A DNA stretch of 64,000 nt from Styela clava (GCF_964204865.1 NC_135256.1:9486001-9550000); one strand, 5' to 3'; positions 4,971-51,022 are shown, counted from the stretch's first letter. The notes: a model not told the origin generated them from the sequence alone. A program made the numbers and translations.

Positions 4971-7900
4971 GTGACATTTAATGATACTGCACCTACACCT
5001 ACAAACTGGAGTCTGAATCAAGCAGTTCTTCTTCAACCTTTCGAGGATTCAGCAATACATCAAAGCAAGAATGCCAACTAACAATGGCAGAATTTTTTCA
5101 AGGTCAGAATTTCAAACAACTCAAGAGTAAGTTTCCGGTACTCAAAGTAAATTTGGAAAGAATTTTAACACGATTTGAGCACTCTCTGGAAAGAAGAGAT
5201 TTTGAAAAGGTCAAAATACTGTTTCACGATGCTAACGATAAAATAGCATTTTTGGTCTGTCTAATTGATACTATGGAATTGGCTCTAATTGAAGAAGACA
5301 GTACTACACAAAGTGAGGAAAAACCCGTTATATCCAAATTTAGTGAAGAAATTTTACGCGTGGAAAACAATATTGCAATCGATTTTGAGAAATATGAAGA
5401 CAAACTAGATATAAAGCCGGTGATATCATCTCTTGTAACCACTCAAAACAATTATAATAATGATCCTCCTATGATTAAGTTATGTGGTATGGATCCGCCA
5501 TGCTGGAACGGACAAAAAGTAGACTTTTATACCTGGAAAGAACGTTTTACAGATATAATGCACCATGCTAGAATTACGGATGATTTAGTGCAAATTTCAT
5601 GGCTTTTACGCAATGGTGCAATGCCAAACGATTATCAAACAATGATATGTGACTGTAAATCAATTTCAAGTGCATGGGAACGCCTGGAAGAGCGTATTCC
5701 TAAATCAGTAGTTCAACGTGAAGTAATTAAGCAATACGAGCAAATAAAACCTTTATATAAGACCTCTCGTAATCCAGCGAACCTTAGGCGACTGGCTCAC
5801 GAAATTTCTCTCTTCTGCCGACGTATGGAAGATCTTGGGTTAAAACAGGATGCAAACTCGGTTTTTTCTGTCAATAGAGCATTAGAGTGTCTAGATGCAG
5901 ACACTGCACTGCGATATAATAGTTCCAGCAAAGGTAATCATAACTTGGAATCTATAACGAATTTTCTGAGATCTGAAGCTACAGCGTTGGAAATATCTGG
6001 TAACTTTATCAGTCAAACCGAGAATATGAGGTTTCGACCGAGACAAAACCAGTCGCCAAGATCTAATTTCAATACGGTTAATCATGCTACAGACGAGAAT
6101 GATAACATGGGTTCAGTTCAGCCAAGTCAAAGCACAGTCACTTGTATTTTTGGATGTGGAATTCAGCACCGCCTTATAGACTGCAACAAATATCAAAACC
6201 TATCAATTCCTGAAAGAAAAAACTTTATAGCAGATGATCGAAGATGTTTTATATGTCTAGGAACTCACTTTGCAAGAAATTGTGCAAGAACAACAGCCGA
6301 TAGCTGTGTAAATTGTAACCAAAGACAGCATCATTGGTCATTATGTCCCGGAAAAGTACAGGGAAATTACAATACAATGAGAAATTCTGGTATGAACGAC
6401 TCGAATTTGGAAAGTCAACATATTCACTCTAATGCAGCAGTATTCAACCAATCTCAGATGCATTCAAGACAATTGAGCGCTTTTAATTTGGATTATTCTC
6501 CATTACTTGTTGCAGAAGTGCAGGCGAGTGACAAAACATGGATCAAGGCAAATTTCTTTCTTGATGGTGGCAGTAACCATTCTTTGGTAAGACGTAATTT
6601 TGTAAAATCATTGAAACAAAAGGCAATAGGTCATGGGTTAATTCGGTTTGGTGTCGCAGGAGGAGCCATTCATGAAGAATCTTCTGGATGTAAGATTATA
6701 ATTTAAAAATTAGACCTCTTTCACGAGACCAGATATTTGATATCAGAGTTACGGCTGTGAGAAAACCTTGTCACGATGTTACACCAATTCCGCCATCTAT
6801 TTTTAAACAGTTTGAATATCTAAGAGGAATTCAGGATAAAATACCAGTTGGGCAAAAAACAGTCGATGTTCTTGTTGGTAGAGATTATGCACCTTTAATT
6901 CAAACAATGCATTCATTTCGTTCGCCAATTGATCCCGATAATCATCCTTCAGCAGCTTTCACATCTCTTGGATGCTATCTATATGGAGGCATTATTCAAG
7001 CACCGCAACGATCTTTCAATCATGTAGCAAATATTAATAGTTTTTCATCATTAGAAAATGAAGAGTTGCGCAAGTTTTTCCATGGTGAAGTTCTTGGAGT
7101 GCAACCCACAACTTTGTGTGTTTGTTCTAACTCAGAAATTGCAGAATCAGCATTTATCAAACATGTAAAAGCGACAACCAATATTAGTGCTGATGGCCGA
7201 GTTTGTGTCAAAATGCCATGGAAACCTGGTTTCCCAGAAAAATTGCACAACAATTTTGAGAAGGCGTATGAACAAATGAAAAAACGGGAACAAGAATTGT
7301 ATAGAAAAGGAAAAACGGAAGAGTATAATATGGAGATTAAAAATCTGCTTCAGCGAGGCGTAGTACGACGACTAACACCGGTTGAAACGAAAACGGCTAA
7401 AGTTGAAAATGCATGGTACCTCAATCATCGTATCGTAGAACGTCCGGATAAAACCTCAACAAAATTAAGAATAGTATTTGATTCTGCGTGTCCTTTTAAG
7501 GGTACATGTCTCAATGATAGTTTAGAGCAGTGCTTCCCAAACTTTTTTGACCATCGCCCCCTTAAAGTAGTTTATACAACTTCATCGCCCCCCTGTACTA
7601 CAAAAAAATATAAAGTCAGAAACGAATACATTACAGACCAAATAAGAAGACAAATCATAGTTTATAGTGTTTTTTAATGAGATAGATCAGATTGGTGTTC
7701 TTCAGCGAGTTTTTTTATTATATCTAAAATTACCCCGTTTACTGATGGAAAGGTGATTTCGTTGTTTTAATAGCAATAGTAGCACGGCTGAAAACCCCCC
7801 TTTTTACCATATAATAGGTCGGAAATGAAAGAATCCAGGGTTCTACCTCCTCAAAAACCGCCGTGTACTCTTGCCTTATAGCATTTCACTTCCTAAATCC

Positions 7901-9412: not shown

Positions 9413-12400
9413 GGATACGCAAACTACCTTGCCTTACTGCGAAGACGAGACCAGAAATCCTTTCGCGTGTGATAATCGCCCACGTGATTCAAGCCTGCGA
9501 ATGCACACAGAGTACAGAATTAAGTGCGCCGAACATAAAACAGGTTTCGCAAAATCGCCCCCCTATCGCCCTCTAAGACTTTTTCGCCCCCCTCTGTATC
9601 GTTTTCGCCCACTGGGGGGCGATATCGCCCACTTTGGGAATCACTGGTTTAGAGAAAGGCCCCAGCTTTGCGAATTCTTTGTTCAGATGTTTCATGGCAT
9701 GGCGAGCTGATAGTGTGGCTTGGCTATTGCTGGTGATATATCGAAAATGTTTAATCAAATTCAAATGGCAGAAGTCGATCAGAAATTTCATCGTTTCCTT
9801 TGGCGCTATGGGGATTCATCGTTGCAACCAACAATCTTTCAATGGCTTCGGGTTATGTTCGGAGATAAATCTAGTCCTGACTTGGCATGCTTTAAAATTA
9901 AATTTTTAGCCGATAAATTTCGAAAAGATCATCCTCTTGGAGCTGTTGTATTGGACAAAGATACATACATTGATGATGTCAGTCATTCTGTTTCGAATCA
10001 CATTCTTGCAAACAAGGTTATCAATGATGTTGATCAAATACTTATTCGTGGAAAATTCTCTATAAAGATTTGGAACTCAAACCATCCTGAAGTAGATCAA
10101 AATCCTGGTGAAAAAGTTGTTGATGTACTTGGTCATTCCTGGAATAAAACTGATGACAGTTTCAGTTCAAAATTCAAAGACATTTCTTTCATGCAAACAG
10201 GATTTTCTAAAAGAAAAGCGTTAGCATGTGTAATGAAATTGTGGGACCCTCTGGATTATTTACTTCCAGTCACAATGCAGTATAGAATAGATCTTCAAAA
10301 GATCTGGGCAGATGGATTTAGCTGGGACCAAACTTTGCCAGATGATGTGGTCAAATGCTGGTATAACAATGTTCGAGAAATGTCCAAGTTAGCTCAAGTT
10401 TCAACTCCAAGATGTCTGAAACCTGAAAACACAACTGGACCTTCTCAACTGCACGCATTTTCAGACGGTGGAGATTTAGCCTATGGCACTTGTGTGTTCT
10501 TAACTTCTTACGGTGGCCTACAACAGGTGGAGTTAAGCTAACATTCGTTGCAGCAAAGGGATTTGTGGCGCCACTCAAACACAAAAGTACTCCAAGAAAG
10601 GAGCTAATGGGAGCAATAGGCATGAGCAGATTGGTGCATGAAATAAGTAGAGCACTACCGTACAATATTGCATTCAAGTATTTCTGGATAGACAGCAAAG
10701 TTGTTATTTATTGGTTGAACTCCCAATCTGGAAAATTCAAACCATTCGTTGCTTCAAGAGTACAAGAATTTCAAGATACACATAAGAATCTAACAAAAGA
10801 AGTCAAATTCATTCCAAGTCTTCTTAATGCTGCAGATTGTTTAACAAAACCTATTTCCTGCGAGAAGCTTACAATTTGGCATGAAGGACCTGAATTTCTA
10901 AGGCAACCAATGGAATATTGGCCGAATGATGATAACTTAAAATTAGATGAATTATGTCAAGAAATATTGGAAGAAAAACCACCAACTAAGTCGAAAGCAT
11001 ATCGCGGAAAAAGACAATTCAACGTCGTTAAAGCAGATTTGCCTTATCAAAATGATAATGATTTAGCGGATAATTTTTCTTCATGGCAAGACTTGCTAAG
11101 AGCGACAGCTTGGATGAAGGGTGCATTTCAGCAAAAATCATTTGTCAATTTGGAATTAAAACTGCCGATGTCGTACAATACACAGAGAAAGCAAAATTGT
11201 GTATATTCAGAATTTGTCAAAAGTCTATGATTGATGAATTTGGGAAGGCTGTCAAAACTCTATGGAAATTAGACTTGTTATTCGATTCTCACGGAATTCT
11301 TCGTATTGGTGGAAGACTGAATAGAACTGATTTATATATGGAAATGAAGCATCTAGTCGTACTTCCGGGCAAACATTCCCTCGTTCGTCTTCTTGGAGTG
11401 TTCTATCATAAAAAGTTCTTACATCAAGGGTATCGAGTTATATTGGCAAATATGAAGAATGACGGTATTGTTCTTATTGGTGGAAGAATACTCTTAAAAT
11501 CAATAGCATCAATGTGTATATTTTGCAGAATTCGTCGTAGAAAGTTGCTACAGCAACGCATGGGAGAACTTCCTTCATTTCGAATGCAACCACAGATGGC
11601 ACCATTCAATTCTGTAGCAATGAGTTTTTTCGGATACTTGAAAGTAAAGCAATCTCGAAATGTAGTTATCAACGCGTCTGTTTTGATTATTACATGTGCA
11701 ACCACTCGTTATATTCATCTGGAACTGTGTCTGGCTCTGGATACTAATTCGTTCCTTCGGGCATGGAGACGATTTGTATCTATAAGGGGAATTCATCCTG
11801 CATTTGTATTTTCCGACGGAGGTACTACATTTCACGCTAGTCAAGCGCCTATCAAGGAATGGATCGAGAAATGGAAATTTCAGTTGATTCAACATGAGAT
11901 GGCAGAGAATCAAACGAAATTTGATTGGAAATATAATGTGCCTTACGCGTCACATATGAATGGAGTAGTAGAATCGCTTATCAACTCGGTTCGCAAAGCA
12001 CTCGATGCATCAGTGGTGAATTACAGCAGGGCTCTTATGACCTACGAAGAATGGACAACTGTTCTCAACGAAATTACTTATATCATCAATAGTCGACCAC
12101 TTTTCCCAGATGGAAACCCTTTGGAATATAATTGTATTACTGGCAATACTCTTTTACATCCATATGCAAAGCAGGTAGTCCCTCAAACTACACAAGAAGA
12201 GAAATTCAATCCACGAGACATGCTAAAAGTGGCGGAAAACAGAGTTGAGGTGTTCTGGAAAACATGGATGAAACACATACCGCATCAGCTATTACTTGCT
12301 AACAAATGGTTTCGAACAAGACGCAATCTTCAAGTTGGAGATTACGTATTAATTATTCAACCTGGATTTAAAGGCGGAAGTGCACCAGGAGGTTTATGGA

Positions 12401-12639
12401 AAAAAGCACTGGTTCACAACATTATGCCCAGTTCAGATGGCTTGGTGAGAAGTGTTACAATCAAAGACAGCGATGGGAATTTATACAATCGACCAATACA
12501 TAAACTTTGTCTAATTGCGACCAAAGAAGAGCTACAGTGTGGGTTGAAAGACATCTAATCTCATATCAGTTACTCCGAGTCAACAATGTTCAATATTATC
12601 GTCTTTTTCATTGCATTCATAGAGTGGGGGGGGGGGGGG

Positions 12640-13967: not shown

Positions 13968-16900
13968 ATGTCATCATCTTCAGACGACGGGGAGGATTAT
14001 ATATATTACAAGTATGTCTAAACAATTTTTGACCACTGTATTGTTGTAGTGAACATGCAGAATAAGGCTATGAAGAAGAAACTTTGCTTATTACAGTATT
14101 ACAGTATTAGGCCTACTTACAGCTGTACAGACTTAGACTATTGCTACTCACAATTCTTTTTTTCAGAGATCGTCCAGAGTGGAATGATGTAACACCAGTA
14201 CCACAAGATGATGGACCTCACCCAGTTGTACAGATTGCTTACAGTGAAAAATGTATTCCTTCTTTTATTCACTTTTATGGTTACTTTAATTTATCTTTAG
14301 GCCCATCTTTGTTTCTTGATTTTATCTCAAGAATGCTGATAAGAATTTGATTGTTCCCCAGGGCAAATTATATGGCAAACTTAATGGATTGAAGGATCCA
14401 ATTAATATAAATATTCTGATAGGCTATATATTATCCACCTATAGTTATATAATTGTTACCATTTTTACAGTCAAAGATGTCTTTGATTACTTTCGAGCAG
14501 TTTTGAAATCAAACGAAAAAAGTGAACGAGCTCTCGAACTCACAAAAAGTGCGATTGATATGAATCCTGCAAATTACACAGTATGGCAATATAGGTATGC
14601 AATATTTGTAATCAAACTGGTTGGTGTATTATGTAAGGTGTTGGGAACACACTGTTGTCTCAAACCTAATAAATCTGGCCGAGAAATGCTGACTAAATTG
14701 CAATCGAAGTGATGTGCAAGAAGACTTCTTGCCATCAAAAGGTTGTTCTCATAACTTTTTGCAGAGGCTATATGTTATAGCCATTTGTATCCATGAAAGA
14801 ATGCGATTAGGCTTTTTTTAACACCTCTGCTGGAAAGATTTGCCATAAAGCAAGCAAAATACTTTCAGTACAAAATTTTTTTTGAGATTTGAAACATCGC
14901 AGTGGTTGGGAACTGGCTGTTAATTTTGAATGACTAAAAGCCTTATTGGTGGGGATGGGATAGACAAGTTAAGATGACGAAGTTCGTTACAATATCTGTC
15001 ACAGAGGCAGAATGACATCATATTTTGTCAATGGCTAAGATTGTGCATTCTTAAAATTACTTTTAGAGCAATGATATTCATAGTCTTTCAATTTGGATAA
15101 GGCTGATCAAGTGTAGGTGTTGGAGCAAGATGTCCAGAATGGGGTAGCAATACTCCATACGTGTTGATTTTTTTTATAATTGGGATACAATTCTGCCTCA
15201 TCCTGTTCAATTTTGAATAGTTATGCTTTCGTACCTATATTAACCACTTACTCTTTGGCTAAATTATTTTATAATCAATTCTATCATACTTTCAAGATCC
15301 GTTTTGGGGTTGCTATTTTGACTGTGAGATTTCATTGTCATCCTCCAATTGCCAAGTGTTCTTTACTGCAATATTTCGTAAGATGTATTCGGTCTCACCT
15401 CTTTTTACATAGTAGTAATAGTATTTTGATAATTCATACAGTTGTGATTAATGGCATTCTCTCATTTTTATATAGGAGAGTTCTCTTGAAACATTTAAAA
15501 AAGGACATTACAGAAGAAATGAATTTTCTCTCTGGTCTTATTACCGAGCAACAAAAAAATTATCAGGTTTGGCATCACAGACGAGCGCTGGTTGAATGGT
15601 CAGGGGACCCCTCAAAAGAATTAGAATTTACGGCAGAGATTTTGAATTTGGATCATAAAAATTATCATGCATGGCAACATAGACAATGGGTAATAAAAGT
15701 AAGTAAAAGCTTAGCATTATCTTCTGCGTTTATAACAATATTTGTTTGTATATAAAATACATAGAGAATCTGATTACTGCAGATTTTTGTGTGAATGACA
15801 GCATTGCATGAAGAGTTTTATGTCAACTTTTTGAACACAATATAATAATGTTTATTATAAATTTGTTAGACGAGGAAACAATAAATTTCGGAAGTCTCGA
15901 ATTATTGTCTTTAAAATTGAAATTGATCTACTCATTTTGTCAATGATTCTTCTGCCCTGGATACTATTTGATTCAACTGAAATAGAAAAATAAACATACT
16001 TATAGTGGCTGAAAATAAGTTGAAAAATGAAGTTAATAATCTGTTGATAATTAGAAAATCACCTTCCATACATTGCAGGAATATTTATTATGGGAAGGTG
16101 AACTTGATTTTGTGGATTCATTTCTTGAGTCTGATCTTCGCAACAATTCTGCTTGGAATCACAGATATTATGTTGTTTCTCATACTAAAGGATTAACAGA
16201 CGAAGTTGTTAAAAAAGAAATTGAGTAAGATCATACATTTCTCATATTGTAAGTCTGGTTATATTCTGTTTATTGCAGAGGTTCCTGGCCAAAGATTTAT
16301 AGAACACCAAGCGGTAGTGTGATGAACAAGACTCATTCATCCAATTCTCTTGTAATTTCTGAGAGGAAAATCAACATTGAAATTGCATATACGCCGAAAA
16401 TCAATTTACGTAAAACAAACATTTTTTTCCCATTTTTCAATGAACTGTAAGTTATATAACATGCAGTTATACAGTAAAATCAATATAAATACAATATAAA
16501 ATACCACACTAATCTAGAAACGAAACCATGCATTTTGAGAATATGTGTATATGAAGCTAGAATCATGTGTTTTATTTGAGCTCAAATGATGGCGCACTTT
16601 ATAATAAATTCTGAAACAACATTTTTAGATACGTAACAAAAAAGATTGATATGGTCACAAAGAACGAAAGTGCATGGAATTATTTGAGAGGGTGAGTATT
16701 TTTTCAAATTTGCCAGCCAGTAGTTACCATATTGGCACAGAGAGATTTGAAATGAAGCATTATTAATCGCTAATTGTTAACCACTTCGGAATATAGTATA
16801 TTTGAATCATGGGTTTCACCCAAGGTTGCCAAATTTTTCAAACTCATGGCTTGTTCTTGTTGGCATAAGGCGGTTGATTGTCCGGTGCTCTGATACCAGC

Positions 16901-38429: not shown

Positions 38430-41400
38430 TTAAACTTTTTGAAATATCTGTGGATATCCTAGCATTAGTAAAGCTTTTCTCGCAGCGCTTTCTCTCGCAT
38501 CCAGCATTGTGGTCATTCCTGAATCACTTTCGGCACTCATTGATTCCATGAACTTGTGTAACGCTCTACTACTGACCACTGCAAAATATACTTGACCAAG
38601 GTCAATTTGTGACTTCACCTGTGGAAGGAAGTATAATACATCCGTATATAATGTAACTATAAAGCATTTTTACAATCGCTTCATCAAATTGAATTTGTAG
38701 ATAGATTATCGAAGAAGGGGTGAATTTGGGTTTCAATATAATCTTTATTCAATTCAGACTGGGTTTTCGTTAAAACAATGAAATAATAATGTCACTTGAC
38801 CAACCTCAAAAGTGTGATATTGCGGTGGATGATATCCCCACTGTACGGCATTTTCCCTCAAAACTTGCGTGTATGGTCGAACATCCGCAGTTGCTGGTGA
38901 GACGACAACGCCCATTTTTTCAAGAAGACACTTTGCCGCAGCTTCTTCTGCTTGATCTTGGGTGTAAGATGGCTGAAATAATCAAACATCAGATATGAAG
39001 TGTTCGCGTGGCATGATATTTGGGCGTAGACCGTATTAATAGGGAAACGTGCAAACATTTAGTTGCAGTCGATGCATTATATCATTTTACATGTGCCTAA
39101 ACGGCTCAAAATATAAAAACAGGTATATATAAGATTAGGGTTAGAAATAAGTCTCACTGCAGGAATGCTATTCTCTCGTCTATCATCACTAGGGATGAGA
39201 ATTTCAGGTAATTACCTTAACCGTTAACCGGGTAAAATTAACCGGTTAACCGCAGCGTGACGTTTCACATAATAATTCATAATTTTAGCTTGTTACGTCA
39301 CAATGGTTAGAAAGCAATTTCGCGTGACCCTATCCCGCTCGCTCAAAATTATTCACGAATCGAGATAGTTTCGTGATCGCTCTGCTGCAAGAGATATGCA
39401 GCGTGGGTAGGACATATGGAAGTATTTTAGTAAAACCCGATTCCGTTATTAAATGTCATTTAGGTGACAAATTTTCAGTGTTTGATGTGCAAATTCTACT
39501 TTGAGATATATAAAGAAAAACAGCATCAACTACACACTTGTTGGTTGACATTTTGAAATAAAATCGCGAACAATACATTTCGATCGAAAACTGATTCATA
39601 TTAATTATTGTCAAATTTTCATAATCAGAAATCTTGGTACTTAAATTATTTTTCACATTCATTAGGTTCTCACCAATACAGTTAGCAATATTCTTTTGAA
39701 TTAAACGCCACGGAAGATGAATTTGCGATGACGTAATCATTTTTTAAAGAATTGTACATTATAAAGATGATTTAAACCTGAGATGTCAGTTAACGGTTAA
39801 AATAAATCGCAAGCGTTAACCATCTTAAAATCGGTTAACCAGTTAACCATTCCCAGCCTTAGTCATCACATTATATAGGTCATAATATCTGAAAGGTGTA
39901 TGCACAGACAATTCTGTTGTTATCACACACTTTATTCACATAAAAAAATCAAAACACATTCTAGGCAGAAACAGGTCCAGTCATCGGCATTGGTATTTCT
40001 TTATATCAGACTACAGTACATGTGATAAGCACACGGATTAAAAGTGATCTCCAGACATGAATAGCTAAGGATCAAAGATCACTATATTACACTGTTATGC
40101 GTCACAGACAGAAATGGTGGACGGGGTGAAACGAGAGGGTTGCAAACATAATTTCTAACCAAGCTAAATATCGACGCGAAGTCAACGCCGTTGTTCCCTC
40201 GATTGTGCCAAACAGTATCGTGTATAAGTATTGTGGTTATTGGGACGCCATGCCGATCCATCATAGCTTTAAGTCGACCACATAATCCTGGTTAGGGACT
40301 AACCACAACATATTGAATTTAATTTTCTTGCTAATCCAAAATCTTTCAACGCAACGCAACAGTACACAAATGTCATCGGCATCGCGAGACAAAAAAAAAA
40401 TTGAAAAACAAGCGTACTGAATTCTTGCGCTCGAGTTAATTAAAGCTAGACATAGAATTTTTTTTACTGTTTTATTACCTGTTCTGATGTCGCCAACAAA
40501 ACATCATCAGACAAGAAACTTTCTGGCATGATGTCGAAATCTGTAGAAGATTTCTCAGATGACGAATCCGACGAAGTCAATTTTTCACGGGCAAATGACG
40601 TCATAGTAGTGGCCATTTGCGATTCCTTTCTTTTTGATACTCGGGCTGTTTCATATATTGGAAGAGTTCCACCGTCCCTTAGACACAGTTCATTTGCAGC
40701 CTCTGGATTTCAAACGTATGAGTAGTGAAAGTAAGTTGGGCACGGTAATAGAATTAAGAATATAGAATTACTATAAGAATAAAACTATTTCAGAAAAACT
40801 GAACTAATGATTGTCGACTGTTATGGAGGTTATTTTAATTCATACAGAGTAGAAAACCTTTTTAAATCTATATCTCAAGTGGGCGTAAGCCTATCTAAAG
40901 AGCCTTAAGCGAATATTTACAAAACAAAATGTCGATTGACTGGTTTCAAAAATGCAGTCCTTACTTTTAAAATTCAATATTTTTGATTCGTCAATGTTTG
41001 CTTCTTGTAAGGCAATTCTGGCACAACTTTGTTCCGCATTCTCTCGTTCTTTTGATACAGAATCGATTGTTTTCACCTGAACATCCAATATATAACGTAT
41101 TTATTATAGGATATTCAACAAAGGTCAAGGCTTTTATATCTTTCTGCGAAAGGTATTTTGTTATAAACGTTAACTATATACATAAATACATTTCTACAAA
41201 ATGTGAATATAATACAATGTGGTAAAAGCATTAAGAGATAATAGGAGTAAACTGTATCCTACCTGTAGTAGTATGTCGTCCGTAAACTTATGCCTCTTGA
41301 AAAAATGAAAATCTGATTCCGAGTCAACGCCTGTGCTCCAACTTGCAAACAATGAATGTATTTGCGCAACTCCGATATGAAGTTTGGAAGAACCGAGGAA

Positions 41401-44400
41401 CGTATGATAATTTGGTCGTGTACCAACCGCCGCTTCGCAAAATTGATTTAAAACAGCTTTTGCGTTTTTTCTATCGCCAACTTCAAGGCCAAATTTCTTC
41501 AATGCCTGGAATATAAATTAATCTATTTCTATTAATATATATATATATATATGAGTGTATCAATTTTTGGACACGTTGTGGACATATGAATAGTTTCGCT
41601 CAATTATGTTTTGACGTTCTTGAGGTGATTGATTTTTGGGAAAAATCAATTTTCTTTGCAAATATTGAACCAATTGATTTAACATTTGCAGTACCAGACG
41701 ATGATTTGGGTCGCTATGCTATTACGTTTATCTTAAATTTCCTCCTATTCGTCTGTGAACCAATATTTCACCAAAACTTTTACAGTCTTATTTAAATTCA
41801 AGAGAACAATTTATAGGCTATATGGTATGCTCGTCCCGCTTGCCAGTCAATCACTGCCCAGCGCAGCTACAGCTAGGCCTAACCGCTCCGGTACACCTTA
41901 AATGCATGTAGAGTATTTTTACGAATAATATACCACACGACACCTGAACTGCAGCTTCAGTTTCTGCTTCCTCCGGACTAGAATTTGGTACTTTCGATTT
42001 GACGACAAACTTAGTTTGAAATTTGACAGTACTGTTGAAATATTCACCATCTCTCCGATCTTCGTAAACCGGAGACCCCTGTGCTGACTGTGAAGCATAA
42101 TTATTAATTTATAACCAAATAAATGAACATTTAAATTTATAATATATTTATATCAATAATTATTATCAAGCATGTACCTATTGCAAAATGCAAAAAGATT
42201 TAATCGAGAATCGAATATATATTTTCAAAACAAGATCATTTTTGGGCCATAAAACTTAAATCCAGAAATTGAAAAAATCTTGTTTCTTTCACGACTCGTT
42301 TTCCAATATTGTGTATCATATATTTTTCCACATTGATAAAAAGTCTCATGTTAATTTATATTACCGACTTACCTGGTCAATTAGAAGGTTCTTCAATATT
42401 TTCTGAAAATGACCTGCTTTTGATCCCCCACCGCCACCTACTCCAGTAGTGCCATTTCCCTCACCCGGACAATTCTTTTGGGCAAGCATAGTGAATTAAT
42501 ATATAAACTACATTTGTTATCATGTATAGAATTAGTGGTAAATGTATCGGCATAATGCCGCGATATCGCAAAACTACTATTGCCCAATACAACTATCCAA
42601 ATTAAAATATTTCATTGACTCACAGCTTGTTTTGTATCAATAGAAAGGCCATTGTTTTTATTGTGTTCTTTTTTCTTTCCAAAAATTGGATTGAACGGAA
42701 TCATTAACTTCTTTTTAACTGACTCAGACGGAATTAAGCAACTTGTGGAACTTTTTCGTTTTCCCAATGTACTTCCAGCAGTCTCACTATCTTGCAAACC
42801 AGATGGTCCTTTGAACACATAAATAGTGATCAGTATATCATTATATCAGTATATCATCGCTTAAAGTTTAAACTTTAAAGGACATTCGTAGCAACTGTGC
42901 GTTCGATATCGTTCGTTTTAAACAAAAACTTGTGACTAATATTCTTAGATGGATTAATATAAACCTGCTGGTGCCCCCGAAATATATGTGCCAAGATGGC
43001 GCACAACCTGAACATAGTATGTGTACCAGATTGGGGTCAGGTTGTGTGTCATTTTGGTACACAAACTTCCGAGTGCCAACCTGCTCATAAAGCGAATCGC
43101 GTGATTCATGAGCTGTTTTTTTAAATTTATTCAATGAGTAGGTTATTCATCTTCTGCGTGTACTCTTGTACCTGGTATGTCCGATCCAGCTTCGTGGCTC
43201 TTATTATTTTCCTCGACATGTTGCTGTTTTGCTTTTTCCAAAGCTGTTACAATGAAACAACAAAATAAAATGATATTAGATAATGATGACTAAAAATGAA
43301 ATAAAATCCTTCAGGATTTGCAATGTGATGTTGTAAACAAAAATTGCCATTAACACTTAGGCCTATGGTTAACGATATTGAACGGTTGACGAAAACGCCA
43401 AGCTTTCCAGACTGCCACGAGGCCTGTCTGCCTGTTTGTCGCCAGTTGATAACAAATTTACAACCCAGAGTCGCCGAAGCACGGCCGAGACCACCATGGC
43501 GACCAATTTGGTCGCAATTGCAATCCCTTTCTCGCGGAACACAGTTTGGGAAACGCTGGTTTAAAGTATCGAAATCATTATCTTTATTATCGAAATGACT
43601 TGAAACACATATTGAGATAAAACTATAGATGTCACGAGATATCACTGCGTTGAAAATATAAGGAATGTAATTTGTCTATCAGTGCCAGATTTAACGTAAC
43701 TTTTTTGAATATACCGGACAATTACGTGATTGTGTTAATTGTTAAAACGAGCAAATTACTTTCAGCCTTTGCAGTCGTGTCTGCCGACCCAAATGTGTCG
43801 TCTGTAGTTTCAGTGGATTTGTAACGCACTGCTCCAATTGTTGAAGTTTTCTGAGGAAGCAAAAACTTGCTGTTGGATGCGGAGGTTCCAATGTAATTTG
43901 AAATTGGCGTAGATTTTAGGTTTGGAACTGAATAAGGCCGAGACGATTTCTGTTTCTTGTTTGATACGTATAATCGACTTTTCTTGACCTTGAGAGAAAA
44001 ATGGCTACTTTTTTTCTGTGCTAACTTATTGTATTCAGCTGACTTTCTTTTGTTCTTCCTATTTCGTTTCTTGTTCTTTTTTCTCTTGTTTTCCTGATCT
44101 GACAACATCAAGGAATTGAAACAAGTAGGTTTTTCGTATTTTTCATTTTGTTGAGGCTCATCGAGTCTTCCATTCGACACAAAAAGGTCACTCACGCGAT
44201 CGAGTTGATGTCGCAAATAATTGGCCTGGAAGGAAGAAGATTATTTACATGAGGCTCAGACACAGAGAAAAATAAAATGGACAATAAAATTACAATAACA
44301 ATAAAACATACATAGAAATTAGTAAAAGAAAATATAACATCACATATCCTCTCAAGTATTTTTAATTTTGACAATATGGTTTGTAAATTAAACCGCATGC

Positions 44401-47400
44401 CAAACTGTGTTATCAGTATATTTAAGTTACACTCATGATTCACCTTGCTAAACAATAACGTTATTTTTTCTTCTGCTAAACTTTGTTGTTCTGATAACAG
44501 AATTTCCAATTCGTTCAATTTTTCTTCCACTGATTTTGTGTTTAATGTAAATTTCACTTCTCCTGAAGCAAATACTCGACGAAGACTTCTTAACAACTGA
44601 AAGAGAAATGTGGGTTGTTATTAAAATCATAACAAATAAGATTTCCGTTTCAAACGAATGTTTCGGTGTATCAAAATTGTCATGAAACGTCTAAAGCAGT
44701 TGTTCTTAAACTGGGTTCGATCGAACCCCTGGGGTTCGGTGGAGCTGTTCCAGGGGTTCGACGAGGGTGCTCTGAAACAGTTGCATATTATAAGACTTTT
44801 TTATCACCCTGCATACTAATTATGCAAAAATAACTATAGTTCATGATGACTAATTACTAATGACTTAAACAATTGAATGGAACAATTAATTGGTGTTACC
44901 CTTATTCATATTCTACCGTACTAATAAAATTTACCTCAATTTTACGGATAAATCGAAGATAGGCAGTAATTGTACATGAATGAATGCAAAATCATAGCGT
45001 GTTTGAATTTCACTAGGTGATAAATTTGCGACAAGGAATAGTTTATCGCACAGCTTTACCCGAAATTATTATGATCCATTCAGGACAACCTCGATATGGC
45101 GCCGAATTAATCCTATCTCTATTTCTGTAAAATAAAACAATTGGCAAACGATTTTATTCGCATTTCAGCGCAGTTTAAAGTTTGAGAACAAATTGCTTGA
45201 ACTACCAACGTTTATGGGGTATATTATCATCTTTCGGATTTTCAAAGTTATTTTTTATCAGTTTCCGCCTGTTCACCCGCATAACTTATACAACAAAAAC
45301 CACCTGCTCATTCTGCCGCCAACGTCATTGTGACAAAACAATGGTTATTCCCAAATGGTTATTGATATCTAAGGTTTCATCACAATGTTCATATTCTATA
45401 ACCTTGCAAGAATTAGCTTCCGCTTTATGACGTTACGGTTTGGCTTCTAATTTCAACCGTTCAGTACAATGGGGTTCGGCGGGAGCTTGCAGAATAGCGC
45501 AGGGGTTCGGCAGGCTCACAAAGATTAAGAACCACTGGACTCTAAAGTATTACACCGCCATATATATGTCAGTTTTCGTTTACAATTTGTTTTTTTGCCT
45601 GTTATACGGTGGTCAAGCAAATAATTATTAAAGAAAACAAGATGATTCTCCAACGGATTAGACAGATTACCTCTCTATTTGACGACATCGCCGCAGGGTA
45701 AGGTGCTTCGTCACTTTTTTCGGAATCAAGGCGGTCTTCCAACACATCAAAGCTCGATTTGATTGTTGTCACCACATTGAAATCGCATAGTTTGATCTAA
45801 CAAATTTATGGTTAAAGTTTCGTTAGTTCAACGAAAAATGATATGTAATAATTAACCCAATTAATATATTAAAATATTTTTTAAAAGTACGCGATGTAAA
45901 CTAAAAGTCTAGGTTGAACAACTGGAAAACAATTTTATTAAAAAAAATATTAGCAACTGTGTTATAAGTATTACAAGATTAATAAAACTTCACTCAGATT
46001 ATTTCTAGTTTTGATAATAAATTACCGGGCAAAATAACGCGACGCTGAGTTTTTTGAGCTAGCTTTTTCGAAAAACAGTTTCTATTTGTGCGGTTCACGT
46101 TGAAAAAATCTATTTGTTGATACACTATAAGCCTTTTTCCTTCAGTGTTATTGTTACAAAATTACCTTCTCGATATTTTCCACAGTTTGATTATATTCTC
46201 GATCTGATGTAAAATGACTTTGAAGAACTGCATCATTTAAAAATACTTGTATTTCATCAAAACAAAAGTTTAATTCTTCAACCGTAAACTCCAGTCGAGG
46301 ACTGTGCATTGTCTTATTCCTGATCTAAGAATTATATAAAATTTATGACGTGTTTACGCTCTATCGTAAAACCTTCATAAATAGTTGTAACTTTCTTTAA
46401 TAGTTTATGCAAATATCTGTCTTTACATATTGCACGCTTGTCTAGCTTTAGTAGTAGTCTAACTAATCCTATTGTTACTTATCATAACTAGGCTTGCACG
46501 TAATTTACAGATTTACGGAATTACGGAATTATTTCGAGTTACGGAAGGGAAGTTACGAATTACGTAAAGTCGTAATTATTGGTCGAGCGCTTTCGCGATT
46601 GAAACGAGCTCTCTTCAAAGCAGTCAATTCCGTCGATTGTAAAAAGTGAAAGTTTAAAAAGAAGTTAAAGCTTCGGTATTTGCAGCCGTTTTTCTCACTT
46701 TTCTCTCTCTTGCCAATACGTCACCGTGATAATTAATGTCGCGCTATTCAAACAGCAATATGACGACGGAAGAGAAATTGCGTTATGAACCAACGCAACT
46801 TCGTCTTTTCGGCATCGGTAAAGCGATTGAGACGGCAGAGAAACAACAATATGACGGGATTTCCCGCGATCCGGTAAAAATCCTTTGCGGACCGGCGGTT
46901 GGGAAGCACTGTTTTAGGATACTTAAATCGAATCCAGAATCCTATTCTATTTTTATAGTTACCGTATTTAAATAGTGGGATTTTTCCACCACAATGATTG
47001 AAATTAAAAAAAAAAAGCTAAATTGTAGCCTAAATGTTTAATGTATAACTATCTTTATGCAGTATTTAATTGAAAATGTCCTGATCATTGGATTATATTT
47101 AACCAAGGCAACGAGATTCACGAATTTCGACGATCGTTTTTTTTTGTTTTTAACAGTTCAATATTCTCAATTTAACTACTATCAAATATCAAGTATGAGC
47201 CAGTGTGTTTATTCTGTGCGAGAACCATTTTCAATTACAAAACCTTGATGTTCTGTTACCGGTTCTATCGTTTTATATCAGTCCGGACTTGTCCTTGCTC
47301 AATATATTTTCCACAATGCCTCGCAATATTTCGGCCAAATATGATTAACTGTCTTTACCAAATGCGGCAACTTATTTTGATTCTTGAAAACCACCGACAC

Positions 47401-50400
47401 TCGACCAAATTTGTGTCAATCTTGGCCGATAGGATTGTCGACTTGAGTTAGAAAAATAAGTTAACTTTTTCGTGCGTGCAAAATAAATGTCACAATATGC
47501 ATTTTTTTGCGATATAACTTTGTATTTTCGGAAAAGCCATATCATATAAGTACGGTATTTAAATTATGCGCAAATAATTAATATTTGATCTAAATTTGTT
47601 GCAAATAATGTTACAACATTTAGGCCGCGACATGATTTAATGTAAAATGAAGCATGGTAATCGGAATAACGTCAATAAGTCGGCATCAATAATTATTATA
47701 AAATGCTGACTAGGTAGTAAAGTCGAATAATGTTAAAAACGGTGCAATAACAAGTCTTCGTCGCGAGGCAAGAGCAAGTATAATCAAACGAGAGAAAACG
47801 CTCGTCATGGCATTGATAAATTGGAAACCCGACATTTTTTCGAATACGATTTTAAAAAAGTCAACTATCGTTTCATAAATATCCGTATACCAGTGTCGGT
47901 AATGATAAAATTGATCGCATAAAATTGGGACGGTTAATTTGCGAAGGTGATAAAGGAAATCAAAGCTAGCACAAAAGATAACATTCAGAATAAAATTAAT
48001 TTGAATTCACTCTTGTCTTAACATCTGTCCCCGGCGTGTAGTACTGCCAGGAATATGAAAACCCAAACTCGATGTCCCAATCGAAAATGAAGTGAATTCA
48101 AGTGGTTGTTATGATAGGTTTAAATGTGTGAAAAAATATCGCAATTACGGGGTCATTACGTAATCGATTTGGCCGTAATTACGGAATTGATTTTTGTCAA
48201 TTACGTGCAAGCCTAATCATAACTAATGTAATACTTTATAATAAGTATAAAGTTGAAGTAATAGAAAAACTATAAAGCAATATTAGCCCTCCCCGGGAAG
48301 AAAAAATAACCTGTCTCACACGATGCACCTGACCCAGATCAGTGACGTAATTCTCAAACGGACGAAACTGTGTCATAAAATTCATTAGTCCGGTGGCATC
48401 AAAATCTTTAGCAGTGAAAATATTGGAAGACACTCGACTTCCTTTTGGCATAAACACCTGTAATTAGTTTTCAGGTCAGTTATGGTCTTGCTATAAAATG
48501 TTTATGAAGTTTTCAAGAAATATTTTGATGATAGTTTCAAGACTGCAGCAGGTAAAATTTCATTCAGTAAATGTAGAAATTGGCCTAATATTTCCAATTT
48601 ATTGACTGTATGCACTGTAAAGCGACTGTTAAATAAAAATATTGTATTTATTATTAGTATGTATTATTGTATCTATTATTTAGACTGTGAGAGTGTAGAG
48701 TAAAATCATGCACGAAGAACACTCAGCAAGAAATTGTAGCCATATATGGGTGTAACTAGTTATGCGATTTATTTTTAGACTGCAGTGAAATTCAGGTTTA
48801 TATTATACCTTGGCGATTTCCCAAGGTCCGTAGTCAACAGAAAGCCATTTGTTGACATCGCTGCGCCTCCAAACTTCACCTGGTTTAATCGATTCTCTGT
48901 GTAGTTTCGATACTTCTCTGATAAATTCTCGTTGCCTAAAAATCAACCACAGTTTTTATTCAGCACGGCGGTGTGGCTCAACGGGCTGAGCGTTAGGAAT
49001 ACGCTCGCCACCGCACCTCTAATTACTCTGCGTGGGTTCGCAGGTTCGAGTTCCATGCAGGGATGGTTATGTGCGAGAGGATTGCTGGACTCCTCGCCGT
49101 CGTTGGGTGGTTCACGTAACCGCTGGTCGGTTACGGCTTCCTCCACCACCAAGTCCATGCTTCCGAAAACAAACAATATAACTTATCCCATACCCGACTT
49201 GGAATGGTAACCGGACGAGAGGCCGTGGTTCGCCATATGGATAAGCCGTTTTATCGGCTTTCCTCTCCCCCGGGATAAATATGTAAATCCTATCCTATCC
49301 TATCATATTTGGTTGTCATTTTTGACAGTTTCTATATGTAATTTATGATCAATCGACGATTCTGGAGCTAATGCCCAACAATCGCTATAGGTAGAAATTT
49401 CAGTTTATGACCGTGAATATGTTATATAAATTGCCTAACAGTGCACAAAAAAACTTGGAATTTAACTCCTGGGTCGGGAAAATTGTGATCTACCGACTCT
49501 TTGTGTTGGGCTTCAGGAATATACGCAGAATATACATACACAAATCTAGTGCACCATTTAGAACAACCAACCTGTATATGCGTGATTGAAAATATTAGGT
49601 TAACAATTTTGCCCGACTGCGAATACATATTCATTAATAATTTTTCAATCCAAATTTCATTTATGCTGAGAGAATTACTAATCCTCCTACTCGAGGTATT
49701 TCTTAGATAAATTTTCAGAAGCAAGTAAAAACACTTGACAAGTTAGAAAAGCAGTTGCATGTAGCCAGGAATGCACCGAAAGGTCCATATACATCTATTT
49801 TGATGTCCAGGTATTTTAAACAAATCTGATAAATTCCATACCATCCAATCCGGGCATTGTTCGTGTACTTATCTCTTAGTTCTAGATGAAATTCTATAAG
49901 GAGTTTATCCACTAGCGACGCCACTGCATCGCAGGTACATCTAGAAAAAATTAATTACGCTTTTACCATACACGCGATACTTTGAGCAATAGTTTTTTCT
50001 TACGCCCAATGTCTTGTGGATAGATAAATGTACAAAGCGAAGTGAGTAATCGACAATACCGAGGGTACACAATGTCTGTGTGTTCTATCGTTTTTCACTT
50101 AAAAGTTTTGTGTGATTACATGAATTAAAACTTTTTCACCGTGTGCAGGTTCCGCATTTCAGAGATGTCGTGGTCGGTGAAGTCGGGAGTTTTATGATAA
50201 CGTAGATTATAGTCACTATGAAAAAAGATTTGATACTCGGCCTACTTTTTTTTTTTGTATCCATATATCTGAGCATAAATCATATCCATATACTTGATTG
50301 AAAAATGAGATTTAAATGTGATGGGTTCAAAATGGAGAAGATACTTAATTTTTCAACAATAATATTAGTCTAGCAGAACGAGCCATAAGTCGGCTCTACG

Positions 50401-51022
50401 TTCATTGTAAACATAATACCTGAGTGCTATTCCAACTTTAAGCCAATTTTTGTAGCGATCATTTTCAAATATGGCCTCCCATCCATCTCTTTCCTTCAAC
50501 ACCTCAGTTAGTTTCGAATGGCATGGATCTACAAAGTATTCTAATTGGTGAAATATATCCCAATATTTTGAAAACTTATTTTTTCAAACAGCAAAGAAAT
50601 TCAATTTTGTAATCAAATGAAAATCTTAGCAAAGCACTTTGTTTGTTATCATATACATTTGTAAGAGATCCGATGATTTGTCTAATTTTGAACTGCTAAT
50701 TTAAAATAGATATATATAGTGCATTGGAGTTCAACTCGTAATCTTTAAGGTTCGTAGAGGAATTGTGGAAACCAAATAAGGTAATTTTAATGCATTTAAA
50801 ATGACTGACGCACAAATACCGTTATGGTAATAGACAACTAATTATTATTATATCTATATTACCTGTGGCATCCTCAACACTTTTGGCAGTAGAGGTTTGC
50901 GAACCAAGTTTATCCGATTGCGAAGAAGACGCATTACGGCTTGAATATCTCCGTAACGACTTTGACGAATTTTTTATGACCTTATAACCTTTTTTAAGCC
51001 TACTAGTGAGTTTCTCATACAT
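38430..51022 (-). CDS. CXorf38/DUF4559-like HEPN domain protein with a basic linker and four C-terminal dsRBD-like repeats; 18 exons (51022-50863, 50540-50420, 49940-49842, 48935-48809, 48457-48311, 46324-46166, 45796-45671, 44596-44444, 44225-43760, 43243-43172, 42808-42624, 42474-42373, 42087-41944, 41505-41263, 41076-40965, 40702-40479, 38972-38805, 38618-38430), about 998 aa
   Basis: All introns GT-AG with consistent phases; total 2997 nt, open. CXorf38-type motifs YKNWLKVGIAL, WEIAKVFMPKG, DFDATGLMNF and IRNKTMHS. Repeats end in AExEAAxxAL-type helices. Confidence 0.85.
39190..39861. mobile_element. Non-autonomous hAT element (intronic)
   Basis: TAGGGATGAGAAT / ATTCCCAGCCTTA; TSD ATCATCAC/GTCATCAC; TTAACCG subterminal repeats. 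Confidence 0.8.
44697..45537. mobile_element. Non-autonomous hAT (Charlie-like) element (intronic)
   Basis: CAGTTGTTCTTAA / TTAAGAACCACTG; GGGGTTCG subterminal repeats; TCTAAAG on both flanks. Confidence 0.8.
46489..48215. mobile_element. Young non-autonomous hAT element (intronic)
   Basis: Perfect 17-bp TIRs TAGGCTTGCACGTAATT / AATTACGTGCAAGCCTA; perfect TSD ATCATAAC; ATTACG subterminal arrays. Confidence 0.93.
48967..49305 (+). mobile_element. tRNA-derived SINE, apparently full length
   Basis: A-box-like TGGCTCAACGG, B-box-like GGTTCGAGTTCC, and (CCTAT)n tail; second copy at 18077. Confidence 0.8.

What the first reader, a model, noticed from the sequence alone, without database searches (positions are those of the whole stretch)
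38430..51022. HEPN (CXorf38-like) nuclease domain fused to four tandem dsRBD-like repeats: candidate dsRNA-sensing RNase
Seen in sequence: 18 phase-consistent exons splice into one open frame of about 998 aa. The N-terminal part has YKNWLKVGIAL, WEIAKVFMPKG, DFDATGLMNF and IRNKTMHS. From memory these parallel human CXorf38 (YKNWVKAGHCL, WEVAKAFMPRG, CDAVALL, CRNEIMHS). The C-terminal part has four repeats with dsRBD layout (helix, PxY, strands, AExxAAxxAL helix). Established: R-x4-6-H is the HEPN RNase active-site motif (RNase L/Ire1 KEN, Cas13, Csm6); HEPN domains act as dimers; dsRBDs are the sensors of PKR and ADAR; human CXorf38 is a small protein without dsRBDs. Inference: a single-chain sensor-effector in which dsRNA binding or repeat-mediated dimerisation activates RNA cleavage, for antiviral or anti-transposon defence or for RNA processing. 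I cannot verify whether this architecture is already catalogued.
Basis: partly seen in the sequence, partly recalled or inferred. Interest (0 to 1): 0.9.

Follow-up and report, generated by a model that had tools for sequence, protein, structure and literature searches.

The report
Tunicate CXorf38-type HEPN protein with dsRBD repeats
This is a real sea-squirt (Styela clava) gene that joins a predicted RNA-cutting HEPN domain of the CXorf38 family to four very divergent double-stranded-RNA-binding-type repeats; the same domain combination was described by computer analysis in 2013 and has never been tested at the bench.

Summary
On the minus strand, 18 GT-AG exons (window 51022-38433, stop at 38430) encode 994 aa, not about 998. 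Exon by exon they are identical to RefSeq XP_039251565.2, Styela clava "uncharacterized protein LOC120329024".

Residues 74-284 match Pfam DUF4559, the CXorf38 family, at E 1e-28, and all four quoted motifs are present, including R216-x4-H221.

Pfam's dsrm model does not detect the four C-terminal repeats. A profile built from them aligns over its full length with bona fide dsRBDs (hhalign 94%, score 40; shuffled maximum 13). Repeat 1 also matches a dsRBD of a hemichordate protein that has the same layout of HEPN plus four dsRBDs.

The architecture is not new. Anantharaman et al. [quoted passage not shown]

Three things are particular to this copy:
- All four repeats have lost the KKxAK RNA-contact motif and are neutral to acidic.
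- The family's Zn-ribbon insert is missing.
- A 245-aa basic linker separates the two halves.

A predicted homodimer of the HEPN domain puts the two Rx4H motifs face to face (score 0.53; best control 0.00). The "dsRNA sensor" reading is therefore only partly supported here. No RNA reads could be examined.

Verdict: new member of a known kind, of modest interest.

The parts
50863..51022 (-). Exon 1 (start codon at 51022-51020; aa 1-53 plus 1 nt); basic, serine-rich N-terminus
   Evidence: Identical to P0004 aa 1-53, GT donor
50420..50528 (-). Exon 2 (aa 54-90); start of the DUF4559/HEPN domain, YKNWLKVGIAL
49842..49940 (-). Exon 3 (aa 90-123); HEPN helix. The family's Zn-ribbon insert would lie at the exon 3/4 junction and is absent.
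48809..48935 (-). Exon 4 (aa 123-165); ends in ...GPWEIAK
48311..48457 (-). Exon 5 (aa 166-214); VFMPKG and DFDATGLMNF, with D185 at 48398-48400. The alternative donor after 48320 gives isoform X2 (991 aa, lacks VRQ).
   Evidence: Pfam DUF4559 profile positions 108-156, E 1.8e-4 for the exon alone
46166..46324 (-). Exon 6 (aa 215-267); HEPN motif R216-N-K-T-M-H221 at 46304-46321
   Evidence: Pfam DUF4559 profile positions 153-203, E 2e-5 for the exon alone
45671..45796 (-). Exon 7 (aa 268-309); end of the DUF4559 match (aa 284 at 45746), helical
44444..44596 (-). Exon 8 (aa 310-360); long helix, coiled-coil-like
43760..44225 (-). Exon 9 (aa 361-516); low-complexity basic linker with KRKKNKKRNRKNKRK (aa 407-421, window 44043-44087)
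43172..43243 (-). Exon 10 (aa 516-540); linker
42624..42808 (-). Exon 11 (aa 540-601); linker
42373..42474 (-). Exon 12 (aa 602-635); Gly-rich stretch, then helix alpha1 of repeat 1
41944..42087 (-). Exon 13 (aa 636-683); strands and alpha2 of repeat 1
41263..41505 (-). Exon 14 (aa 684-764); end of repeat 1, then alpha1, strands and the 27-aa insert of repeat 2
40965..41076 (-). Exon 15 (aa 765-802); alpha2 of repeat 2 and start of repeat 3
40479..40702 (-). Exon 16 (aa 802-876); repeat 3 alpha1, strands and an acidic Ser-rich insert
38805..38972 (-). Exon 17 (aa 877-932); alpha2 of repeat 3 and alpha1 of repeat 4
38430..38618 (-). Exon 18 (aa 933-994) plus the TAA stop at 38430-38432; strands and alpha2 of repeat 4
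   Evidence: sub-threshold Pfam DND1_DSRM match on aa 922-985
45746..50469 (-). Genomic span of the DUF4559 (CXorf38-type HEPN) domain, aa 74-284
   Evidence: Pfam PF15112, E 1.1e-28, 101 bits; coordinates
42415..44177 (-). Genomic span of the basic low-complexity linker, aa 377-621 (net charge +25, pI 10)
   Evidence: no dsRBD signal in it
38445..42414 (-). Genomic span of the four divergent dsRBD-type repeats: R1 41485-42414, R2 40993-41469, R3 38910-40977, R4 38445-38885
   Evidence: hhalign 94% probability against dsRBD alignments, with controls; BLASTP of R1 to a Ptychodera dsRBD, E 3e-5; coordinates

Best explanation
**What it is.** The single-copy Styela clava gene LOC120329024 is a tunicate member of the CXorf38 (Pfam DUF4559) family of HEPN-domain proteins. 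It has the family's known 'HEPN + dsRBD' architecture.

**Layout (994 aa).**
- A short basic N-terminus.
- An all-helical HEPN domain (about aa 70-290) with the R216-N-x3-H221 motif and the conserved D185.
- A helical, coiled-coil-like stretch (to about aa 376).
- A 245-aa basic, disordered linker containing a KRKKNKKRNRKNKRK patch.
- Four tandem, strongly diverged dsRBD-fold repeats (aa 622-990).

**Most likely mechanism (inferred, not shown).** Like other HEPN RNases, the domain pairs into a homodimer whose two Rx4H motifs form one composite, metal-independent endoribonuclease site.

The C-terminal repeats descend from true dsRNA-binding domains of the ancestral protein. In this lineage they have lost the canonical RNA-contact residues. 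They more probably act as a protein-protein, self-association or regulatory module ('type B' dsRBDs). RNA contact would then fall to the basic linker.

The biological role is most likely RNA surveillance or innate defence, as proposed for the family in 2013.
For: **Shown here**
- Exon-by-exon identity with RefSeq XP_039251565.2, with all introns GT-AG.
- The gene is single copy in the genome.
- Pfam DUF4559 at E 4.5e-29 and 1.1e-28, aa 74-284. Three exons also hit it in collinear order on their own.
- The HEPN half aligns with the Ptychodera protein at 29% identity, E 1e-27, and with the fish protein at 27%, E 3e-14. YKNWLK, WE-AKV-MP-G, D185 and R216 N217 M220 H221 S222 are invariant.
- Those two relatives carry DUF4559 plus Pfam dsrm. 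Ptychodera has four dsrm stretches, E 6.7e-24.
- The profile of the repeats against dsRBDs: hhalign probability 94.6%, E 6.5e-8, over the full length. It still reaches 94.2% when the two hemichordate domains that BLAST directly to it are removed. Column-shuffled controls give mean 8.0, maximum 12.8, against 41.4 observed. Other parts of the protein score 10 or less.
- Repeat 1 against Ptychodera dsRBD3: BLASTP E 3e-5.
- A sub-threshold Pfam DND1_DSRM match covers repeat 4.
- The nearest ESM Atlas clusters are mostly dsrm families at 0.80-0.86. This is a lead only.
- The KKxAK motif is degenerate in all four repeats, which have pI 8.2, 7.1, 4.7 and 6.4.
- Homodimer prediction for aa 60-300: score 0.53, best of 3 controls 0.00. 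The tool's mark was reached by 21 of 30 proteins solved as pairs of one chain and 0 of 23 solved as single chains. The three runs share at least 88% of contacts, and pLDDT is at least 77. The interface contains residues 217, 220-225 and 182-187.

**From the literature**
- CXorf38 was defined as a HEPN family, predicted active and fused to dsRBDs in several deuterostomes (PMC3710099).
Against: - No RNA reads could be examined, so the single transcript rests on the RefSeq model and on orthologues with the same fusion.
- Both AlphaFold2 runs failed (mean pLDDT 38 and 36). Neither the HEPN fold nor the dsRBD fold was confirmed by structure comparison.
- Pfam dsrm does not detect the repeats.
- Against the eight canonical dsRBDs of this genome alone, only helix alpha2 aligns (score 23.9).
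- The DUF4559 match stops at profile position 221 of 305.
- The complex tool warns that on eukaryotes only 1 of 7 pairs without an older solved relative reached its mark, and that a pass may come from memory.
- No member of this family has a demonstrated RNase activity.
- Loss of KKxAK does not prove loss of RNA binding.
Confidence: 0.72

Rival explanations
1. One reading: a single-chain sensor-effector. The four repeats bind (viral or transposon) dsRNA, and this binding drives HEPN dimerisation or relieves autoinhibition, so that RNA is cleaved. It would be a functional analogue of RNase L or PKR.
For: - The family-level architecture and the 2013 proposal of dsRNA substrates.
- The hemichordate and fish relatives keep KK-type motifs in several dsRBDs.
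- The HEPN motif is intact and a dimer is predicted.
- Repeats 3 and 4 keep the helix-alpha1 Glu, and repeat 2 keeps a His in the beta1-beta2 loop.
- A 2026 preprint proposes an autoinhibited state for human CXorf38.
Against: - At the three Lys positions of KKxAK, the four Styela repeats keep 0, 1, 0 and 1 basic residues.
- The repeats are neutral to acidic, and two of them carry inserts of 27-29 aa.
- The Pfam dsrm model fails on them.
- No binding or expression data exist.
Confidence: 0.2
2. A non-catalytic protein. The HEPN-type domain serves only as an RNA- or protein-binding scaffold, as proposed for the sacsin HEPN domain, and the gene encodes an adaptor rather than a nuclease.
For: - No CXorf38-family member has been shown to cleave RNA.
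- The Zn ribbon present in the two relatives compared here, and listed for the family in the 2013 paper, is lost in this protein.
- Only profile positions 2-221 of 305 of DUF4559 are matched.
Against: - R216, N217, H221 and D185 are invariant between tunicate, hemichordate and fish despite 27-29% overall identity.
- The predicted dimer juxtaposes exactly these residues.
- The 2013 analysis scores the family as 'active'.
Confidence: 0.06
3. A gene-model artefact: two neighbouring genes, a CXorf38-like gene and a dsRBD-repeat gene, joined by prediction through low-complexity 'exons' 9-12.
For: - The linker exons have no detectable homologues.
- No reads were examined.
Against: - All 17 introns are GT-AG and keep phase with no stop.
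- RefSeq gives two isoforms of the full-length model, which differ only by a 9-nt alternative donor.
- The hemichordate and fish proteins have the same fusion in one chain.
- No other DUF4559 locus exists in the genome.
Confidence: 0.02

Closest known systems
CXorf38 family of HEPN domains (Pfam DUF4559, PF15112), dsRBD-fused versions, as defined by Anantharaman, Makarova, Burroughs, Koonin and Aravind 2013 (PMC3710099)
   Same: - The N-terminal DUF4559 domain with the RNxxxH motif.
- C-terminal tandem dsRBD-type domains.
- A deuterostome distribution. The paper lists Ciona among the taxa that have the family.
- The Ptychodera protein P0007 has exactly HEPN + 4 dsRBDs.
   Different: - The Styela protein lacks the Zn-ribbon insert.
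- It has a 245-aa basic linker in place of the first dsRBDs of its relatives.
- Its four repeats fall below Pfam detection and lack the KKxAK motif.
- Repeats 2 and 3 look like a lineage-specific internal duplication (z about 11).
Human CXorf38 (a protein consisting of the DUF4559 domain alone)
   Same: - The same Pfam family.
- The same catalytic-type motif: human 162-RNEIMH as quoted in a 2026 preprint, and a conserved Asp that corresponds to D185 here by its place in the conserved FD motif.
- A helical segment follows the core in both.
   Different:
RNase L / Ire1 KEN-domain HEPN RNases
   Same: A HEPN RNase domain that works as a dimer, coupled in one chain to a sensor or regulatory module, with a proposed innate-immune role.
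   Different: - A different HEPN family; there is no Pfam cross-hit.
- The sensor of RNase L is ankyrin repeats binding 2-5A plus a pseudokinase, not dsRBDs.
- Activity is demonstrated for RNase L and not for this family.
Type B (non-RNA-binding) dsRBDs, for example the third dsRBD of TRBP/PACT or Staufen dsRBD5 (my own knowledge)
   Same: The dsRBD layout, with the basic RNA-contact residues of helix alpha2 replaced, as in repeats 1-4.
   Different: A protein-protein role is documented for those domains. Here it is only inferred from sequence.

Membership tests
CXorf38 / DUF4559 (PF15112) | Match to the Pfam profile above the gathering score | tested here: met
   101-102 bits against a cut-off of 27, E 1e-28 to 4.5e-29, aa 74-284. 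Collinear partial hits in exons 2, 5 and 6.
CXorf38 / DUF4559 (PF15112) | Family signature blocks YKNWLK, WE(V/I)AKV(F/Y)MPxG, (F/T)D, RNxxMHS | tested here: met
   Conserved in the alignment with the hemichordate and fish members.
CXorf38 / DUF4559 (PF15112) | Zn ribbon inserted into the HEPN domain (listed for the family in PMC3710099) | tested here: not met
   The Cys cluster is present in P0006 and P0007. P0004 has an 18-column gap there and no Cys. This is a frequent but not obligatory feature, so the protein is filed as a member that lost the insert.
CXorf38 / DUF4559 (PF15112) | C-terminal helical part of the profile (positions 222-305) | tested here: inconclusive
   Not matched by HMMER. 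Long helices are predicted at aa 255-376, but only in low-confidence models.
HEPN superfamily | R-x4-6-H motif | tested here: met
   R216-N-K-T-M-H221, invariant in three phyla. Window 46304-46321.
HEPN superfamily | All-alpha four-helix core fold | tested here: inconclusive
   AlphaFold2 mean pLDDT was 38 and 36. DSSP shows only helices in aa 77-250. There is no sequence hit to a solved HEPN structure. No fold search was run because the models are unreliable.
HEPN superfamily | Dimer with the two Rx4H motifs facing each other | tested here: met
   Prediction only. Score 0.53, best of 3 controls 0.00. The mark was reached by 21 of 30 proteins solved as pairs of one chain and 0 of 23 solved as single chains. 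Contacts agree at 88% or more, and pLDDT is 77 or more. The interface includes residues 217, 220-225 and 182-187, with residue 220 of one copy touching residue 220 of the other.
HEPN superfamily | Metal-independent endoRNase activity dependent on R and H | not testable with these tools
   Needs biochemistry. It is also untested for human CXorf38.
dsRBD (Pfam dsrm PF00035 and its clan) | Match to the Pfam dsrm profile | tested here: not met
   No hit exon by exon, in the six-frame genome scan, or on the full protein at E up to 10. The only signal is a sub-threshold DND1_DSRM match on repeat 4, E 0.0038, 17.9 bits against a cut-off of 25.7.
dsRBD (Pfam dsrm PF00035 and its clan) | Profile-level homology to bona fide dsRBDs over the whole domain | tested here: met
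   hhalign 94.6%, and 94.2% when the closest relatives are removed. Score 40-41 against a shuffled maximum of 12.8. Other parts of the protein score 10 or less. R1 matches Ptychodera dsRBD3 at E 3e-5.
dsRBD (Pfam dsrm PF00035 and its clan) | alpha1-beta1-beta2-beta3-alpha2 fold | tested here: inconclusive
   The structure models are of low confidence. Helices fall at the expected alpha1 and alpha2 positions of most repeats, and no strands are modelled.
dsRBD (Pfam dsrm PF00035 and its clan) | Canonical dsRNA-contact residues (KKxAK at the alpha2 N-terminus, GPxH loop) | tested here: not met
   R1 PEEAE, R2 RENAE, R3 QDQAE, R4 MLDAR. No repeat has an intact GPxH; R2 keeps only the loop His. pI 4.7-8.2.

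The most novel reading that the evidence does not exclude
The deuterostome CXorf38 + dsRBD proteins, this one included, could be an unrecognised dsRNA-triggered HEPN RNase pathway, a single-chain counterpart of OAS/RNase L. In the Styela branch the sensor may have been rewired. The acidic, KKxAK-less dsRBD repeats would act as an intramolecular lid or as a docking site for another factor. The basic linker would take over RNA contact.
Probability: 0.15. Interest if true: 0.65.

Novelty: new member of a known kind. Interest (0 to 1): 0.3.

Why it matters
The CXorf38 family includes a human gene of unknown function. It has been predicted since 2013 to be an active HEPN RNase with an immune role, and nobody has shown this.

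A tunicate member with an intact catalytic motif, a predicted composite dimer site and degenerate dsRBDs gives a natural contrast to the hemichordate and fish versions, which keep canonical dsRBDs. It could be used to ask whether dsRNA binding is needed for activity.

In itself the finding adds an annotation to a RefSeq "uncharacterized protein". It also shows that Pfam misses its four dsRBD-type repeats. It does not reveal a new kind of system.

Tried and rejected
- **Joined model.** I never joined the exons into a spliced protein for any search. Searches used single exons by reference, and then the RefSeq proteins that the search returned. Identity with P0004 was checked exon by exon and split codon by split codon.
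- **AlphaFold2.** The single-sequence run on P0002 and the 3-sequence alignment run on P0004 both failed (mean pLDDT 38 and 36). No fold search was run, because such models give meaningless matches.
- **Homologue searches.**
  - The search with aa 620-994 found only the protein itself.
  - The search with aa 55-300 added one fish protein.
  - The profile search added one hemichordate protein; low-complexity words probably filled the candidate list.
  - The representative search with exon 6 gave the Styela protein and one junk tandem-repeat protein, P0001, which I rejected as spurious.
- **Small HMM.** An HMM built from nine bona fide dsRBDs (eight from this genome plus the fish protein's first dsRBD) gave only fragmentary, non-significant hits on the repeats. 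One search used the wrong strand for the minus-strand hits and is void.
- **PDB sequence searches.** Nothing for the Styela protein. The family profile hits solved dsRBDs, but through the relatives' first dsRBD and not through the Styela repeats.
- **PADLOC.** No hit.
- **Second DUF4559 hit.** The hit on contig C16 is a weak match in an unrelated 727-aa ORF with a long coiled-coil-like C-terminal half. It was read by eye and not scanned against Pfam, and I rejected it as spurious.
- **RNA genes.** No tRNA or Rfam feature in the region.
Full report
**1. What is in the sequence**

The window has no N and is G000:C8:9486001-9550000 of a 377-Mb assembly.

I searched the model exon by exon, by reference. 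The exon with IRNKTMHS (window 46157-46324, minus) matched one real protein among 1.84 billion representatives. This was P0002, 994 aa, 95% identical. A second hit, P0001, is a junk tandem-repeat sequence.

P0002 is RefSeq XP_039251565.1, [quoted passage not shown]. Its cluster also holds version .2 (P0004) and a 991-aa isoform X2.

Using P0002 as a guide, I placed 17 introns. All are GT-AG. An exon-by-exon comparison, with the six split codons checked one at a time, shows that the window encodes P0004 exactly. It has 18 exons, 2982 nt and 994 aa, with a TAA stop at 38432-38430.

Isoform X2 uses a donor 9 nt upstream in exon 5 (after 48320) and lacks VRQ. P0002 differs from the window's protein at 9 residues, none of them in a motif.

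I did not build or search a joined sequence of my own. From here on, the database proteins stand in for it.

The gene is single copy. The DUF4559 profile found one further, weak hit, on contig C16. It lies in an unrelated 727-aa ORF with a long coiled-coil-like C-terminal half, and I rejected it by eye as spurious. The whole protein matches only this locus.

**2. The N-terminal half**

Taken alone, exons 2, 5 and 6 hit Pfam DUF4559 (PF15112, the CXorf38 family) at profile positions 2-19, 108-156 and 153-203, in collinear order. The full protein scores 101-102 bits (E 1e-28 to 4.5e-29) over aa 74-284, which covers profile positions 2-221 of 305.

BLASTP gives 29% identity (E 1e-27) to a Ptychodera flava protein (P0007). 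It gives 27% identity (E 3e-14) to a fish protein named si:ch211-91p5.3 (P0006). In the three-way alignment, YKNWLK, WE-AKV-MP-G, D185 and R216 N217 M220 H221 S222 are invariant.

Anantharaman et al. 2013 defined CXorf38 as a new HEPN family, predicted to be active, with a Zn ribbon inserted into the domain (PMC3710099). The Cys cluster of that ribbon is present in P0006 and P0007. The Styela protein has a gap there and no Cys.

A 2026 preprint still treats human CXorf38 as a hypothetical HEPN RNase. It names the motif 162-RNEIMH, a proposed His-Asp dyad, and a possible autoinhibitory helical tail.

No other HEPN Pfam family cross-hits the protein. No solved structure is detectable by sequence.

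**3. Dimer prediction**

Two copies of aa 60-300 were folded together.
- The score was 0.53, and the best of 3 controls was 0.00.
- The tool's mark was reached by 21 of 30 proteins solved as pairs of one chain and by 0 of 23 solved as single chains.
- On eukaryotes the mark was reached by 17 of 29 such pairs, but by only 1 of the 7 with no older solved relative, so a pass may come from memory.
- The three runs share at least 88% of contacts, and pLDDT is at least 77.
- The symmetric interface contains residues 217, 220-225 (the Rx4H motif) and 182-187 (around D185). Residue 220 of one copy touches residue 220 of the other.

This is the arrangement expected of a HEPN composite active site. It is a model and not a measurement.

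**4. The C-terminal half**

Pfam dsrm does not see the repeats. There was no hit exon by exon. The six-frame scan of the genome found 21 other dsrm sites and none in this window. The whole protein gave nothing at E up to 10.

Other evidence shows that they are dsRBD-type domains.
- **Relatives.** The hemichordate relative has DUF4559 followed by four Pfam dsrm stretches (E 6.7e-24). The fish relative has DUF4559 plus dsrm.
- **Direct match.** Styela aa 623-719 aligns with Ptychodera aa 519-610, its third dsRBD and the start of the fourth, at 31% identity, E 3e-5. Styela aa 878-932 aligns with an inter-repeat segment of the fish protein, E 0.003.
- **Profile comparison.**
  - A profile of the four repeats (aa 622-690, 696-792, 798-897, 906-990) aligns over its full length with an alignment of 13 bona fide dsRBDs. 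hhalign gives probability 94.6%, E 6.5e-8, score 41.4.
  - Without the two hemichordate domains that BLAST to it, the values are 94.2% and score 40.4.
  - Column-shuffled queries give mean 8.0 and maximum 12.8.
  - Seven other segments of the same protein score 10 or less.
  - Against only the eight canonical dsRBDs of this genome, just helix alpha2 aligns. The score is 23.9, against a shuffled mean of 8.9 and maximum of 15.4.
- **Repeat 4.** It has a sub-threshold, nearly full-length match to Pfam DND1_DSRM (E 0.0038, 17.9 bits).
- **ESM Atlas.** The nearest clusters by protein-language features are mostly dsrm families, at 0.80-0.86. This is a lead only.

Structure could not settle the question, because both AlphaFold2 runs gave mean pLDDT below 40.

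**5. The repeats are degenerate**

In the joint alignment, the canonical S-K-K-x-A-K at the start of helix alpha2 reads PEEAE in R1, RENAE in R2, QDQAE in R3 and MLDAR in R4. No repeat has an intact GPxH loop motif; R2 keeps only the loop His.
- R2 carries a 27-aa insert.
- R3 carries an acidic Ser-rich insert of about 29 aa.

The repeats have pI 8.2, 7.1, 4.7 and 6.4. Seven of the eight canonical dsRBDs of the same genome have pI 9.0-9.9. This agrees with an earlier first-reader note on the same stretch (s1-817711).

By pairwise z-scores, R2 and R3 are duplicates of each other (z about 11). R1 pairs with hemichordate dsRBD3 (z 9), and R4 with dsRBD1 or dsRBD4 (z 6-7).

Between the two halves lie a helical, coiled-coil-like stretch and a 245-aa linker. 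The linker has net charge +25 and includes KRKKNKKRNRKNKRK. It has no detectable homologues and no dsRBD remnant.

**6. Interpretation**

The protein is a member of the CXorf38 HEPN family with the family's known dsRBD fusion. The catalytic-type residues are under strong conservation, and the predicted dimer puts them together. An active, dimeric, metal-independent endoRNase is therefore the most likely mechanism. That follows from what is established for HEPN RNases and was not shown here.

This is plausible for the ancestral protein and for the hemichordate and fish versions. It is weakened for Styela by the loss of the RNA-contact residues. I rate a protein-interaction or regulatory role for the repeats, with the basic linker as the likelier RNA-contact surface, above canonical dsRNA sensing.

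The rivals are a non-catalytic scaffold and a mis-joined gene model. Both are less likely, for the reasons given in their entries.

**7. Novelty**

[quoted passage not shown] It lists Ciona among the taxa with the family, and it suggests dsRNA substrates such as viral replication intermediates.

Full-text searches found no experimental work on the fused form. The architecture is therefore already catalogued.

What is added here is the assignment of an "uncharacterized" Styela RefSeq protein to that architecture, the recognition of four repeats that Pfam misses, and their degenerate state.

**8. Limits**
- All homologue-search quotas were used and yielded only two relatives, so alignments are shallow.
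- No human sequence was fetched or compared.

Noticed in passing
window 48963-49300 (intron 3 of the gene): A roughly 338-bp interspersed repeat. The first look found at least 1319 candidates in the genome, and the scored copies are 96-98% identical. It looks like a young SINE-like family. No tRNA or Rfam match was found in it.
   Followed up: partly
window 43357-43543 (intron 9 of the gene): An older interspersed repeat of about 190 bp, with at least 292 candidates at 73-88% identity. It accounts for the 142-aa open segment seen there on the minus strand.
   Followed up: partly
window 9720-12558 (+): Pieces of the pol gene of a BEL/Pao-type LTR retrotransposon: RVT_1, Peptidase_A17 and DUF5641, in three overlapping frames. 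Two upstream ORFs, 5084-6706 and 6757-7677, have no Pfam match.
   Followed up: no
window 15180-15755 (+): An exon-sized ORF with protein prenyltransferase alpha-subunit repeats (PPTA, E 3e-19). It is probably part of an unrelated neighbouring gene.
   Followed up: no
window 48311-48320 (exon 5 donor region): Two in-phase GT donors lie 9 nt apart and correspond to RefSeq isoforms X1 (994 aa) and X2 (991 aa). The three residues VRQ sit just before the R216 motif.
   Followed up: yes
P0002 compared with P0004 (the same gene in two RefSeq versions): Nine amino-acid differences in 994 between XP_039251565.1 and .2, spread over all regions and avoiding the conserved motifs. This is consistent with allelic polymorphism between assemblies.
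   Followed up: partly
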